Shown in pieces: positions 38,073 to 57,116 of a stretch of DNA of 64,000 bases. The DNA lies in IMG/VR virus record IMGVR_UViG_3300033571_009404, positions 186,001 to 250,000 of that record; one strand, 5' to 3'. The notes below the pieces were generated by a model. It did no database searches. It saw only the letters and a list, made by a program, of their open reading frames with translations, and was not told the origin of the DNA. Position numbers and translations under genes: made by a program. Positions within the stretch are counted from its first letter, which is position 1. Each line of letters begins with the position of its first letter.

Positions 38073-38121
38073 GGCTCTACCCTTCGGGGTAGAGCTGTTT
38101 GTCCGTCTGTCTTTTTTTTTT
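38073..38121 (+). terminator. UUCG hairpin plus T-run
   Basis: GGCTCTACCC-TTCG-GGGTAGAGCT, then a long T tract. Confidence 0.75.
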
Positions 38122-53961: not shown

Positions 53962-54028
53962 CCTTGTTTTTTTTTGTGTTATCCAATAACCAACATCCTT
54001 TGTAGTGATCTATTTAAAGGAGGATGTA

Positions 54029-54520: not shown

Positions 54521-54994
54521 TTAATACGGAGGAATCAAAGTGACTTTCAACGGCAGTGGATCCAAGTACTCATAGATCAAGCTTCGCACATCACTCCATT
54601 GGAATGGTTCACTTCCATTATTCTTCCCACGCTGACCCTTACCGCAGCCTAAGCCTGGAATGGCAATAGAAGTAATACCCATCTTCCCATAGTTGTCCGC
54701 CAGTCGTTCTAACCCATGATCAATTAAGCTCAGAGGGGATCTAACTTTCCAGTGGTTTTTCGTAGGGAAACAAAGTACTTTCTTGTCATCCTTGTGGTCA
54801 AACAAGAAAAGTCCATTGGAGCTAAACACACCAAATTGGCATGCGCGTTGATATGCTGGGTAGAGTCCATCAAACTTTTCTCTAAAAGCATACGCTAATC
54901 CATTACCCATCACACCCACTTTATTCACCGGGCATACCAGTGTTTGGCAGTCTACCTTGAAGATATCAAGCCTTTTGTCTTCAACGATAATCAT
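54521..54994 (-). CDS. Stand-alone DarG-like macrodomain (ADP-ribosyl glycohydrolase)
   Basis: VCPVNKVGVMGNGLAYAF, FPTKNHW (DarG catalytic Lys position), SIAIPGLGCG and W..VR..I: the DarG macrodomain pattern. Confidence 0.85.
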   Translation of the reverse strand: MIIVEDKRLDIFKVDCQTLVCPVNKVGVMGNGLAYAFREKFDGLYPAYQRACQFGVFSSNGLFLFDHKDDKKVLCFPTKNHWKVRSPLSLIDHGLERLADNYGKMGITSIAIPGLGCGKGQRGKNNGSEPFQWSDVRSLIYEYLDPLPLKVTLIPPY

Positions 54995-55404
54995 GTTGGT
55001 AAGAAATCAGTTGGAGAATCATTTTCTTTGGACTTATTCCCATTGGTCAAGTTACTTGCTTCAGCCGCCTTACGATTGATGTAAGACTTAGCCTCAAGGA
55101 TAAGCAGATCGTTTAGCCACTTCGGATTCTCCATAAACTCCATGAAGGAACAGTTAAGGTGCTGTCCCATGTTGTAGTTATAGAAAGTCCGAATACGTTC
55201 GGGCAGTCCGGAATAGTGCTCACAGTCTTCTGTCCAGTAAAACGCCGTTACACCCATTGGGTTGGGTGGTTTACCGTCGTCATTAATGGCCAGATTGTAC
55301 TTCTGGTCGTAAGCCTGATCCATGACCAGTCGTACTTCCACAGACGAGAACTGTAGTCGGTCACGATCATGGGAACGTAACTTCTTAAAGACGCCGTCAA
55401 GCAT
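54991..55404 (-). CDS. T-domain-like ORF, probably expressed as the -1 frameshift extension of the upstream gene
   Basis: The frame stays open 41 codons upstream of ATG 55404, back to the T7 run; weak SD. YNMGQHLNCSFMEFMENPKW resembles tail-assembly chaperone extension domains. Confidence 0.6.
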   Translation of the reverse strand: MLDGVFKKLRSHDRDRLQFSSVEVRLVMDQAYDQKYNLAINDDGKPPNPMGVTAFYWTEDCEHYSGLPERIRTFYNYNMGQHLNCSFMEFMENPKWLNDLLILEAKSYINRKAAEASNLTNGNKSKENDSPTDFLPT

Positions 55405-55481
55405 CTCTTGGAAGTCAGCCCAAGGCGTTTTGGTATAACCAAAACGCTGGTGACCGACGTGAGCTAACGTGTGCGGTGACT

Positions 55482-57116
55482 TTAGGGGCGGAGGCTGATC
55501 CGGCGGATTTTCTGCACGAGTAGGGTAAAAAAAGCTGCCAGCGGATCGATGGGGACCAGAATCGGGAAGCGACGGGACTTAGCCGTTTTCTCGATTTCAG
55601 ACTTATCGAATGCAGGAACCGCACAGATGACGAACGTAACATCATCGATGTATTCACGTACCTTAACAAAGTACGAATCGCGCATCTCATCGTCAGACGA
55701 CAGATCCGCTAACATCTCATCGATGGTTTCACGCTTGGTCACGGTTTCCTTAGGATCGTTAGGATCCTCCGAGATGGTGATCTTTTCCACCCAGTGACTG
55801 TACTGGCGCATGTTCGACGCTTGAGCTTGCAGAGAGATCCGTTGATTACGGGAATCATCACTGATGTCTTGCGAGAACGCTTCTTCCGTCATGGCAACAA
55901 TACCATTGACCCAGGCTTGACCGGCATTGAAGTAATCCTTCAGCGACGGGACTTGGAAGTGCAGCCACATCTTGCGATTTTCCGACAGACGCACGATGTT
56001 CTGGCGTTCGGTGAATTCGTTTTGATATGTGGTCAGCATCTCATCAGTCATGGAGCCTTGAGTACGCGAACTCATCATCTGGATTTGACGAGGAGTCAGT
56101 ACCGAGTTGTCCACCCACATGGTCTTGCGCAGATCAATCAGACCATCGATCAAGCTACGTTCCTTACCACCAGCGTCAAACAGAGGACGCACGTATTGGA
56201 AGCCCTTTTGCCAGTGCAGTGCAGCCAGTGCATTCACAATAGCGTACAGGTCAGGCTGTTTGATGTACTGTTCCAGACGAGCGGCAGTCGGATCCTTCAG
56301 CGTGGTTTCCAGCATGTGCTGCATAGCGAAGTTAAACACTTCTTGTGCATAGAACACAGAACTGTTGCCAAAGGCAATACCGTAGGTAGCACGACCGAAA
56401 CGAATCTTCGATGCATCGATACGGTTAAACAGATTGACGATGGCGCCATCACTAGGTGCGCGCAGTGCAATCCAGAGACCCGAATGCCACAGGGGAACGT
56501 ACAGAACGTGACCCATGCCCATTTGCGAACGCATGCGAATCAGTGCATGAGTGCCCGACAGTTGCGACAGACCTTCAGAGCCGATGTTAGGAGCCGAAGC
56601 CACCAGGATCTGACCCTTCTCATTGCGCACCACTTGACGGAACTTCGAGTTCTTCTTGGACAGACGTCGTCGGAAGAAACCACCACGCACTGCGGTGTTC
56701 TCATTACCTTCTTGAATAGCAGCTAGCCATTCAGATGACTTGTCGTCATCGTATTCCACGTTCGGCAGATGGCTGGTGTATTCGGCCACACGAGGAGCGG
56801 TGTCTGTGGGTAGTACCAGTGTTTCCTTATTGGGATCGTAGGTACCAGGATTATGGGACAGGATTGCCCCTTCCATTTCCACAGTCGTCGAGTCCAAATG
56901 CGGCGGCAGTTCGAAGTAAGTGATGCTGGGAGTGGCGGCCTGCTCATTGTCCAGATTGGACTGAGTTTGATCAGCAATCTCAGTAGCAGCTGGGGTTTCT
57001 TGTTGAGCAGGGGTGGCCTGGTCGGAACTGAGGTTCATGGTCAGTTCCGGTTCATCCGATGCCGGAGGAGTTGGTACAGGCAAACTGTCCAGCTCGTTAT
57101 TCACATTGTCGTCCAT
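55482..57116 (-). CDS. Conserved phiKZ-like protein, candidate tail/baseplate assembly chaperone (G-like)
   Basis: 544 aa with an acidic disordered N-terminus; ends DPLAAFFTLLVQKI with the slippery site on FF. Confidence 0.65.
   Translation of the reverse strand: MDDNVNNELDSLPVPTPPASDEPELTMNLSSDQATPAQQETPAATEIADQTQSNLDNEQAATPSITYFELPPHLDSTTVEMEGAILSHNPGTYDPNKETLVLPTDTAPRVAEYTSHLPNVEYDDDKSSEWLAAIQEGNENTAVRGGFFRRRLSKKNSKFRQVVRNEKGQILVASAPNIGSEGLSQLSGTHALIRMRSQMGMGHVLYVPLWHSGLWIALRAPSDGAIVNLFNRIDASKIRFGRATYGIAFGNSSVFYAQEVFNFAMQHMLETTLKDPTAARLEQYIKQPDLYAIVNALAALHWQKGFQYVRPLFDAGGKERSLIDGLIDLRKTMWVDNSVLTPRQIQMMSSRTQGSMTDEMLTTYQNEFTERQNIVRLSENRKMWLHFQVPSLKDYFNAGQAWVNGIVAMTEEAFSQDISDDSRNQRISLQAQASNMRQYSHWVEKITISEDPNDPKETVTKRETIDEMLADLSSDDEMRDSYFVKVREYIDDVTFVICAVPAFDKSEIEKTAKSRRFPILVPIDPLAAFFTLLVQKIRRISLRP
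55527..55533 (-). promoter_or_regulatory. Putative -1 programmed ribosomal frameshift site T-TTT-TTT
   Basis: Minus strand GCT TTT TTT ACC, 14 codons before the stop; a -1 shift reads YPTRAENPPDQ... into the 137-aa ORF without a stop. Confidence 0.6.

What the first reader, a model, noticed from the sequence alone, without database searches (positions are those of the whole stretch)
54991..57116. -1 programmed frameshift producing a G/GT-style protein pair in a jumbo-phage core gene
Seen (minus strand): ...CTG GCA GCT TTT TTT ACC..., a T-TTT-TTT heptamer at 55533-55527, 14 codons before the stop of the 544-aa ORF. The -1 frame is closed by a TAA shortly upstream and contains no start codon around the site. 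It then runs 41 codons (YPTRAENPPDQPPPLKSPHTLAHVGHQRFGYTKTPWADFQE) into the 137-aa ORF, whose ATG has a poor SD. Predicted products are 544 aa and 708 aa. Established: lambda G/GT and P2 E/E' tail chaperones use this architecture, P2 with a T-run. Inference: this conserved phiKZ-like gene pair is a frameshifted tail or baseplate assembly chaperone. I do not know of it being described in this group, and it is not next to a tape-measure gene in this window.
Basis: partly seen in the sequence, partly recalled or inferred. Interest (0 to 1): 0.8.

Follow-up and report, generated by a model that had tools for sequence, protein, structure and literature searches.

The report
Conserved frameshift in jumbo-phage core gene
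A run of seven T's near the end of a core gene of nucleus-forming jumbo phages (the phiKZ gp77 family) most likely makes some ribosomes slip back one base, giving a 544-residue protein and a 708-residue fusion; the arrangement is kept in every relative examined and I found no published description of it.

Summary
On the minus strand, GCT TTT TTT ACC (T7 at 55533-55527) lies 14 codons before the stop of the 544-aa ORF. The -1 frame is open from there for 178 codons into the 137-aa ORF.

The window is a 310-kb IMG/VR jumbo-phage contig. ORF A is the homolog of phiKZ gp077, PhiPA3 gp074 and RAY gp267.

All 40 orthologous loci examined (28 lineages under 50% identity) share the arrangement:
- An in-phase T-run encodes the conserved Phe-Phe. 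The P-site codon is TTT in 26 of 26 lineages, against 8.2 expected from each gene's own codon usage.
- The downstream gene is always in the -1 frame, and that frame is always open from the T-run.
- The linker evolves like coding sequence and carries a conserved H-V-G-x3-F-G motif.
- In 13 of 28 lineages this motif precedes any start codon. In phiKZ the first start is at codon 85.

None of 150 cluster representatives is a single-ORF fusion, and no fetched record annotates a joined CDS. No paper in the library describes this.

Best reading: programmed -1 recoding, most likely ribosomal. Function is less certain. ORF A's predicted fold resembles the T4 gp26/gp51 baseplate-hub assembly chaperones in three structure libraries, but profile-profile comparison is not significant.

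The parts
55482..57116 (-). ORF A, 544 aa including its frame-0 tail (TLLVQKIRRISLRP) and TAA stop. Homolog of phiKZ gp077, PhiPA3 gp074, RAY gp267 and 201phi2-1 gp136; PHROG 4585.
   Evidence: AF2 model pLDDT 87.4, pTM 0.85, with helix 525-541 spanning the slip site and tail.
55527..55533 (-). Slippery heptamer T_TTT_TTT (X_XXY_YYZ in phase). The codons TTT TTT encode the near-invariant Phe529-Phe530.
   Evidence: The same site is present in all 40 orthologous loci. P-site TTT in 26 of 26 lineages against 8.2 expected; X = T in 22 of 26 against 7.2 expected. No indel in four sets of contigs.
55482..55526 (-). Dual-coding overlap: frame-0 tail plus stop, and the first 15 codons of the -1 frame (YPTRAENPPDQPPPL).
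   Evidence: The -1 frame is open across the overlap in 28 of 28 lineages against 17.3 expected under synonymous resampling. The substitution rate is lowest here.
55405..55527 (-). 41-codon -1-frame stretch between the slip site and the first start codon. It contains no ATG, GTG or TTG.
   Evidence: Substitutions by codon position in the post-stop linker are 77/53/133, the same periodicity as the B core at 406/277/656.
55438..55461 (-). Conserved linker motif H-V-G-H-Q-R-F-G (family consensus H[VIL]-x4-FG) in the -1 frame, upstream of any start codon.
   Evidence: Alignment of 39 -1-frame products. The motif precedes the first canonical start in 13 of 28 lineages.
54991..55404 (-). ORF B as called from its ATG (137 aa plus TGA). 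PHROG 12109; homolog of PhiPA3 gp073, RAY gp266 and 201phi2-1 gp135.
   Evidence: The AF2 model is mostly helical with pLDDT 66. It matches only its own family in BFVD.
54991..55527 (-). Whole -1-frame reading frame (178 codons plus stop). Joined after Phe530, it gives the predicted 708-aa A-B fusion.
54521..54994 (-). Context: Macro-domain gene whose ATG overlaps the stop of B (ATGA). Same operon; a terminator-like site follows at 54466-54448.
   Evidence: The same order is seen in L027, L028 and Goslar.

Best explanation
ORF A and ORF B are one recoded gene.

Proposed mechanism:
- Most ribosomes read A in frame 0 and stop at 55482, giving a 544-aa protein.
- A minority slip back one base on U_UUU_UUU, with tRNA-Phe in both the P and A sites.
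- These ribosomes continue in the -1 frame through a proline-rich linker and the B domain to 54991.
- The result is a 708-aa fusion that lacks the last 14 residues of A's C-terminal helix.

Shown here:
- The site, the open frame and their conservation.
- The signature of selection on the slippery nucleotides.
- The coding-type evolution of the linker.

Inferred:
- That the slip is ribosomal rather than transcriptional.
- Its efficiency.
- That both products are needed at a set ratio.

Function, at lower confidence (about 0.4): A is an enlarged relative of the T4 gp26/gp51 baseplate-hub assembly chaperones, and B is a C-terminal module delivered in sub-stoichiometric amounts.
For: 1. All 40 orthologous loci have an in-phase T-run at the conserved FF (LF or VF in three). 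They come from phages of Pseudomonas, Erwinia, Ralstonia, Burkholderia, Xanthomonas, Salmonella, E. coli, Klebsiella, Serratia, Proteus and Vibrio, plus metagenomes. The forms are T_TTT_TTT, T_TTT_TTC, G_TTT_TTT/C, or T5. B is always in the -1 frame, which is open for 148-178 codons from the run.
2. Phe is mostly TTC elsewhere in A (for example 0 TTT of 10 Phe codons, and 1 of 21). The P-site codon is nevertheless TTT in 26 of 26 lineages (expected 8.2), and the preceding wobble base is T in 22 of 26 (expected 7.2).
3. The -1 frame is open through the overlap in 28 of 28 lineages, against 17.3 expected; the product of probabilities is about 1e-8.
4. The linker shows third-position-biased substitution like the B core and holds a conserved motif.
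5. The first canonical start codon lies after that motif in 13 of 28 lineages. It is at codon 85 in phiKZ and 68 in RAY. In KpLz-2_45 and Totoro the motif lies inside the overlap. In several lineages the -1 frame is closed only 3-6 codons upstream of the run.
6. The family has 1273 clusters. All of the top 150 representatives end at the position equivalent to A's stop, so none is a natural single-ORF fusion.
7. The run length is stable: no indel in 47 Phikzvirus genomes or in contigs from four metagenome runs.
8. Fold link to PF12322:
   - BFVD, E 2.9e-4, probability 1.0, TM 0.54 by target.
   - ESM Atlas, TM 0.60 over 241 of 284 residues; this is the only Pfam-bearing set among the 99 nearest models.
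   - PF12322 and PHROG 150 'baseplate hub' are the best annotated families hit by individual members, at E 1e-3 and 1.7e-4.
Against: - There is no direct evidence (peptide, Ribo-seq or reporter) for the trans-frame product.
- No stimulatory element was found. There is no consistent SD-like motif upstream and no conserved downstream hairpin; mean z is -0.31, and the window's own z is +1.3.
- U_UUU_UUU is reported as much less shift-prone than A_AAA_AAG in E. coli (PMC5009743).
- The lineages are related by descent, so the products of probabilities overstate independence.
- The window has an ATG for B, and RP12 has one overlapping A's stop, so free B may also be made in some phages.
- On function: hhalign of the A profile against a gp26/gp51 profile is not significant (probability below 2%).
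- The weak HMM hits may be driven by a shared CxxC motif.
- The neighbouring genes are not tail genes.
- The Churi ortholog is listed as early-expressed.
Confidence: 0.75

Rival explanations
1. Programmed transcriptional slippage. The phage or host RNA polymerase stutters on the A7/T7 template and adds one U to a fraction of mRNAs. Standard translation of those mRNAs then yields the same A-B fusion.
For: - The run is T7 or T8 in most lineages.
- U7 and A7 runs are known slippage-prone motifs and are avoided in all frames in enterobacterial genes (PMC4066793).
- No RNA stimulator for ribosomal shifting was found.
- These phages use unusual multisubunit RNA polymerases, as annotated next to the locus.
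Against: - Several lineages have only T5 or T6 (FLC9, PhiPA3, L010, L015/16, Noxifer, pVp-JHP1101, YongXC31, pir03). These are too short for efficient slippage by known polymerases.
- They still satisfy the in-phase X_XXY_YYZ or Y_YYZ rule, including T_TTT_TTC.
- Slippage would also produce one-base deletions that lead into the +1 frame, which closes quickly in several loci (1-16 codons in RAY, PhiPA3, L009, L010, L017, L019 and L023-L026).
Confidence: 0.12
2. Two ordinary genes. B is translated on its own by internal initiation, possibly at a non-canonical start or by coupling to termination of A. The T-run is conserved only because Phe-Phe is needed in protein A.
For: - The window has an ATG at 55404, and RP12 has an ATG overlapping A's stop.
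- Every database record fetched annotates two genes.
- T4 gene 26 itself uses an internal start for a second product, annotated as 26'.
Against: - This does not explain TTT in 26 of 26 lineages against each gene's own TTC preference, or the T at the preceding wobble base.
- It does not explain the -1 frame always being open back to the run, and closed just before it in several lineages.
- It does not explain coding-type evolution and a conserved motif upstream of any ATG/GTG/TTG in 13 of 28 lineages, with the first start at codon 85 of 165 in phiKZ.
- It does not explain B always lying in the -1 frame in 28 lineages.
- Annotated B lengths range from 74 to 182 aa in BFVD, so annotators found no consistent start.
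Confidence: 0.07
3. Artefact or decay: a homopolymer sequencing error in a single 708-aa gene, or a recent pseudogene.
For: Homopolymer runs are common error sites, and one extra T would fuse the frames.
Against: - The T7 is identical in contigs of three samples plus a divergent strain.
- The same split is seen in 40 loci from many laboratories and platforms, and in 47 Phikzvirus genomes without an indel.
- The frame-0 tail is conserved (TFFxLLxQKxxxIxxR) and is modelled as a confident helix.
- The top 150 of 1273 cluster representatives all end there.
Confidence: 0.01

Closest known systems
Tail assembly chaperone frameshifts of tailed phages (lambda G/GT at G_GGA_AAG; P2 E/E' on a T-run; Mu and others; Xu, Hendrix and Duda 2004, from my own knowledge)
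   Same: - A -1 slip near the 3' end of an upstream ORF.
- Two products share an N-terminus, and the longer, rarer one carries an extra C-terminal domain whose ORF lacks a dependable start.
- The arrangement is conserved across very divergent sequences.
- P2 also uses a U-run.
   Different: - A is 544 aa, against about 100-150 aa for those chaperones.
- The locus is not between the tail tube and tape-measure genes. It sits beside the gp78, gp79 and virion RNA polymerase homologs, a Macro-domain gene and a helicase-like gene.
- There is no sequence or fold match to tail assembly chaperone families. The only hit is a chance-level feature match to P2 GpE, at 0.87.
T4 gp26/gp51, Pfam PF12322 T4_baseplate ('gp26 family baseplate hub assembly chaperone')
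   Same: - The predicted fold of A residues 186-536 covers a PF12322 model at TM 0.60. BFVD gives E 2.9e-4.
- Weak HMM hits fall in one register.
- A local alignment places A's …IAVP…FFTLL on gp26's C-terminal …LAVP…FFELL.
- T4 gene 26 also yields two products, 26 and 26'.
   Different: - A is 2.5 times larger.
- It scores below Pfam's threshold, and hhalign is not significant.
- T4 makes its second product by internal in-frame initiation, which gives a shorter protein, not by a frameshift extension.
- gp26 ends right after FFELL, where A shifts frame.
T7/T3 major capsid protein 10A/10B (-1 shift at G_GUU_UUC near the end of the gene; from my own knowledge)
   Same: - A U-rich slippery site decoded by tRNA-Phe.
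- It lies a few codons before the frame-0 stop and gives a minor C-terminally extended form.
- The T5 lineages here (G_GTT_TTT) are almost the same heptamer.
   Different: A different protein family and a much longer extension (178 aa, a separate conserved domain).
IS3/IS1 transposase orfA-orfB and E. coli dnaX (A_AAA_AAG)
   Same: The same architecture as the IS elements: orfB lies in the -1 frame without its own start and is expressed only as a fusion.
   Different: Those sites use Lys codons and have defined stimulators (an upstream SD-like element and a downstream hairpin or pseudoknot). None was found here.

Membership tests
Programmed -1 ribosomal frameshift site | Slippery X_XXY_YYZ heptamer (or Y_YYZ tetramer) in phase with frame 0 | tested here: met
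   T_TTT_TTT at 55533-55527. An in-phase T-rich heptamer or tetramer is present in all 40 loci.
Programmed -1 ribosomal frameshift site | -1 ORF open from the site and lacking its own dependable initiation | tested here: met
   178 codons are open, and no start occurs for 41 codons in the window. The first start is at codon 85 in phiKZ and 68 in RAY.
Programmed -1 ribosomal frameshift site | Conservation of the site and of synonymous positions beyond what the protein requires | tested here: met
   P-site TTT in 26 of 26 lineages against 8.2 expected. X = T in 22 of 26 against 7.2 expected. Overlap open in 28 of 28 against 17.3 expected.
Programmed -1 ribosomal frameshift site | Stimulatory element (upstream SD-like sequence, or downstream hairpin or pseudoknot) | tested here: not met
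   No conserved structure within 90 nt downstream (mean z -0.31; window +1.3). No consistent SD-like motif upstream. A stimulator is not obligatory for low-level shifting.
Programmed -1 ribosomal frameshift site | Trans-frame protein detected | not testable with these tools
   This needs mass spectrometry, Western blotting or Ribo-seq. No RNA or proteome data were accessible here.
Lambda G/GT - P2 E/E' tail assembly chaperones | Gene pair located between the tail tube (or major tail) gene and the tape-measure gene | tested here: not met
   The neighbours are the gp78, gp79 and virion RNA polymerase beta' homologs, a Macro-domain gene and a helicase-like gene.
Lambda G/GT - P2 E/E' tail assembly chaperones | Sequence or fold membership in a tail assembly chaperone family | tested here: not met
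   Pfam gave no tail assembly chaperone hit. BFVD tail assembly chaperone rows have E above 2. The Atlas feature hit to Phage_P2_GpE scored 0.87, within chance range.
Lambda G/GT - P2 E/E' tail assembly chaperones | Short and long products sharing an N-terminus through a -1 shift | tested here: met
   Predicted products of 544 and 708 aa. This is architecture only.
PF12322 T4_baseplate (gp26/gp51) | Match to the family HMM above the curated threshold | tested here: not met
   The window protein has no hit. Two of 69 family members hit PF12322, best E 1.1e-3. It is the top family, but an E of 1e-3 should fall short of the 24.5-bit cut-off; the bit scores were not reported. PHROG 150 'baseplate hub': 2 of 69 members, E 1.7e-4.
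PF12322 T4_baseplate (gp26/gp51) | Shared fold | tested here: inconclusive
   ESM Atlas: TM 0.60 by hit over 241 residues. BFVD: E 2.9e-4, TM 0.54 by target. AFDB 'Phage baseplate protein': TM 0.49, E 1.7. All are predicted models, and no solved gp26 structure turned up.
PF12322 T4_baseplate (gp26/gp51) | Profile-profile sequence similarity | tested here: not met
   hhalign probability is 1.6% for the full length and below 1% for the C-terminal domain. HMM hits are consistent in register but weak.
PF12322 T4_baseplate (gp26/gp51) | Role in baseplate hub assembly; absent from the virion | not testable with these tools
   The main text of the Goslar virion structure paper does not mention gp81 or gp82, taking the locus tags Goslar_00081/82 as gp numbers. 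The Churi ortholog is listed as early-expressed.

The most novel reading that the evidence does not exclude
The gp77-family A / A-B pair is the contractile-tail jumbo-phage counterpart of the G/GT tail assembly chaperone, built on a gp26/gp51-like fold. On this reading, making a minor extended form is an ancient, shared feature of hub and tail assembly chaperones. Lambda, P2 and the chimalliviruses would do it by frameshift, and T4 gene 26 by internal initiation. The shift here would be tuned not by an RNA structure but by the conserved nascent peptide (RFPxLxPID-x4-FF) or by a phage factor.
Probability: 0.15. Interest if true: 0.8.

Novelty: new member of a known kind. Interest (0 to 1): 0.62.

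Why it matters
- **Annotation.** It would correct the annotation of a gene found in every chimallivirus locus examined here, in a family of 1273 clusters at 50% identity. In phiKZ-like genomes much of the -1 ORF is unannotated. In KTN4 the annotated downstream gene is only its C-terminal 81 aa, and B homologs are called at lengths from 74 to 182 aa.
- **A new protein.** It predicts a previously unlisted ~700-aa protein in well-studied model phages (phiKZ, PhiPA3, 201phi2-1, Goslar, RAY, SPN3US). Existing proteomics data could be searched for it directly.
- **A genetic handle.** Synonymous slip-site mutants would separate the roles of the short and long forms.
- **Biology of recoding.** It adds a recoding event in phages whose mRNAs are translated outside a protein nucleus. 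If the gp26/gp51 link holds, it also ties T4 hub-assembly chaperones to the frameshift logic of tail assembly chaperones.

Tried and rejected
- **Megablast of the region against phages:** no match.
- **The search for related loci:** the 8-sequence alignment had no conserved stretch, and the single protein found only the window itself. A 4-sequence alignment worked.
- **The search for homologous proteins:** only 4 hits for A.
- **Pfam and NCBIfam on A and B:** nothing above threshold.
- **PDB:** nothing by sequence, by Foldseek or by VIA-align wide (only helical-hairpin matches at Z 6 or less).
- **hhalign of A against gp26 or a gp26/gp51 profile:** not significant for the full length or the C-terminal domain.
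- **Downstream RNA structure and upstream SD-like motif:** none conserved.
- **B domain:** low-confidence model; fold and feature searches gave only its own family or chance-level leads.
- **Literature:** searches for a frameshift in Chimalliviridae or jumbo phages, for phiKZ gp77 or gp076, for a tail assembly chaperone in phiKZ, and for SPN3US amber mutants found nothing relevant.
- **Sequencing error or pseudogene:** rejected.
Full report
**1. Observation**

The minus strand reads …CCG CTG GCA GCT TTT TTT ACC CTA CTC…, with the T7 run at 55533-55527.
- ORF A runs 57116..55482 and encodes 544 aa. Phe529-Phe530 are encoded by TTT TTT, and 14 further codons follow before TAA.
- From the last T, the -1 frame is open for 178 codons to the TGA at 54991.
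- The first 41 of those codons contain no ATG, GTG or TTG. The 42nd is the ATG of the 137-aa ORF.
- Upstream, the -1 frame is closed by a TAA 17 codons before the site, with no start codon in between.

The run is not an assembly artefact.
- Contigs from three samples hold the stretch with no differences; one is at depth 123.
- A roughly 97%-identical strain from another study shows no indel.
- Its two nearby substitutions are silent. One changes TAA to TGA in frame 0 and CTA to CTG in frame -1 at the same base.

A T7 run alone is not unusual in 64 kb. It is, however, the only run of 7 or more inside a coding region; the other two are intergenic.

**2. What the genes are**

The window is a 310-kb IMG/VR contig with no close relative among sequenced phages.
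- tblastn finds ORF A in 206 jumbo-phage genomes.
- GenBank notes identify the family as phiKZ gp077, PhiPA3 gp074, 201phi2-1 gp136, EL gp47 and RAY gp267.
- In PhiPA3, RAY, RsoM3USA and LucasX it sits next to the gp78 and gp79 homologs and a virion RNA polymerase subunit.
- PHROGs place A in phrog_4585 and B in phrog_12109, both of unknown function. Pfam gives nothing.
- An exhaustive HMMER search finds 1273 clusters at 50% identity.
- In the window, A, B and a Macro-domain gene whose ATG overlaps B's stop form one minus-strand unit. No promoter-like or terminator-like site lies between A and B.

**3. Comparative test of the frameshift**

I collected 40 orthologous loci:
- 21 annotated phage genomes;
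- 18 IMG/VR contigs plus the window's own contig;
- two metagenome contigs.

Every locus shows the following.
- There is a T-run at the conserved FF, 8-37 codons before A's stop, always in phase. It is T_TTT_TTT in most. It is T_TTT_TTC in SPN3US, Asesino, two Vibrio phages and L023/24. It is G_TTT_TTT or G_TTT_TTC in FLC9, PhiPA3, L010 and Noxifer. Three loci have T5.
- The B homolog always lies in the -1 frame.
- That frame is always open from the run for 148-178 codons.

Statistics over 28 lineages with under 50% identity:
- The P-site Phe codon is TTT in 26 of 26 lineages, against 8.2 expected from each gene's own Phe codon usage. That usage mostly favours TTC, for example 0 TTT of 10 Phe codons or 1 of 21.
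- The wobble base before it is T in 22 of 26, against 7.2 expected.
- The -1 frame is stop-free across the overlap in 28 of 28, against 17.3 expected when the tail is re-encoded synonymously.
- The lineages share ancestry, so these figures overstate independence. At this divergence, though, synonymous sites should be randomised unless they are selected.

The stretch after A's stop behaves as coding sequence in the -1 frame.
- Substitutions at codon positions 1/2/3 are 77/53/133 in the linker, against 406/277/656 in the B core.
- The linker carries a conserved H[VIL]-x4-FG motif.
- In 13 of 28 lineages this motif lies upstream of the first ATG, GTG or TTG.
- In phiKZ (represented by KTN4) the first start is codon 85 of 165, past the conserved Y(E/D)xxFGI block. 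In RAY it is codon 68.
- In KpLz-2_45 and Totoro the motif lies inside the overlap with A.
- In several lineages the -1 frame is closed only 3-6 codons before the run.

Further points:
- None of the top 150 cluster representatives extends beyond A's stop, so no lineage has simply fused the two genes.
- 47 Phikzvirus genomes, including phiKZ and Churi, keep the junction without an indel.
- No fetched record annotates a joined CDS.

**4. Mechanism**

The simplest reading is a tandem -1 slip of two tRNA-Phe on U_UUU_UUU/C. In the T5 and G-first lineages it would be a single A-site or P-site slip on U_UUU. L015/16 also carry an in-phase A_AAG seven codons further on.

No stimulator emerged. There is no consistent SD-like element upstream and no conserved hairpin within 90 nt. 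Mean z is -0.31; only RP12 folds strongly, and the window's own z is +1.3. I therefore expect low efficiency, which fits the reported modest shiftiness of U7 in E. coli (PMC5009743).

Transcriptional slippage on T7 or T8 would give the same protein and cannot be excluded. It fits poorly with the T5/T6 lineages, which still obey the phase rule.

In the AF2 model of A (pLDDT 87.4, pTM 0.85), the slip site lies inside a confident C-terminal helix, residues 525-541. The fusion would cut that helix at FF and continue into a Pro-rich, low-confidence linker and a mostly helical B domain.

**5. Function**

A has no match among solved structures. Three libraries of predicted structures point beyond its own family to one family, PF12322 T4_baseplate.
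- BFVD: 'Baseplate hub assembly protein, bacteriophage T4-like', E 2.9e-4, probability 1.0, TM 0.54 by target. Intermediate-sized hits fall in between.
- AFDB: 'Phage baseplate protein', TM 0.49 by hit, but E 1.7.
- ESM Atlas: a PF12322 cluster at TM 0.60 over 241 of 284 residues. It is the only Pfam-bearing set among the 99 nearest models.

Sequence-level evidence is weaker.
- PF12322 and PHROG 150 'baseplate hub' are the top annotated families hit by individual A members, at E 1.1e-3 and 1.7e-4.
- Both T4 gp26 and gp51 belong to PF12322. NCBI names the family 'baseplate hub assembly chaperone'.
- A gp26/gp51 HMM gives more than 15 weak hits in one register on A's C-terminal domain.
- A local hhalign alignment places …IAVP…FFTLL on gp26's C-terminal …LAVP…FFELL. 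Its probability is below 2%, so this is not significant.

Evidence against a late assembly role:
- Tail genes are not adjacent.
- The Churi ortholog (gp256) is listed among proteomically early-expressed proteins (PMC11849849).

I rate the gp26-like assignment at about 0.4-0.5. It is a lead, not a classification. B matches only its own family.

**6. Novelty**

Full-text searches found no paper that links ribosomal frameshifting with Chimalliviridae or jumbo phages, apart from one unrelated paper on archaeal Borg elements. Three further sources have nothing relevant in their main text:
- the 2025 review of nucleus-forming phages;
- the core-genome paper;
- the 2016 recoding review.

The mechanism is a known kind. 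The gene family, its breadth and the possible tie to hub-assembly chaperones are new as far as I could check. Subscription-only literature was not searched.

**7. Verdict**

Programmed -1 recoding is very likely: about 0.87 for recoding of either kind and about 0.75 for a ribosomal slip. The chaperone function is plausible but unproven. I score interest at 0.62.

Noticed in passing
window 54991-54994 (minus strand): The TGA stop of B overlaps the ATG of the downstream Macro-domain gene (ATGA). Translation of that gene may therefore be coupled to ribosomes in the B frame. The order A, B, Macro is also seen in L027, L028 and Goslar.
   Followed up: partly
window 38112-38121 and 53967-53975: T10 and T9 runs on the plus strand, both intergenic; the second follows the helicase-like ORF. 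They are the only other homopolymer T or A runs of 7 or more in the window, and may be terminator T-tracts.
   Followed up: partly
L015:3807-3835 and L016:3894-3922: These T5 lineages (GTT TTT ACC) carry an in-phase CAA_AAG (A_AAG) seven codons downstream. This is a possible alternative or additional -1 slip site leading into the same frame.
   Followed up: no
L029 (KTN4/phiKZ), L032, L037, L039, L040: about 25 codons before the slip site; window 55590-55625: Many A homologs have a CxxC motif shortly before RFPHLIPID. The window protein has lost it (VICAVPAFD). T4 gp26/gp51 have invariant Cys pairs, so the weak PF12322 hits may partly reflect a shared zinc-ribbon-like element.
   Followed up: partly
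L002 (RP12) 2535-2600: RP12 alone has an ATG overlapping A's stop (TGATG) and a strong predicted hairpin just downstream (z -5.3). It may express B in an additional or different way.
   Followed up: no
L029:2736-3233 (KTN4, species phiKZ): In phiKZ-type genomes only the last 81 codons of the 165-codon -1 ORF are annotated as a gene (KTN4_102). B-family entries in BFVD range from 74 to 182 aa, which shows inconsistent start calls.
   Followed up: yes
window 56920-57116 (A residues 1-65): The N-terminus of A is predicted disordered (pLDDT below 55) and rich in Pro, Glu, Thr and Gln. Its length varies widely among homologs; the SPN3US and Asesino proteins are 650-705 aa.
   Followed up: no
Literature: PMC11849849, Table 1: The Churi ortholog of phiKZ gp077 (gp256) is listed among 15 early-expressed hypothetical proteins found by proteomics. 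This is unexpected for a baseplate assembly factor.
   Followed up: partly
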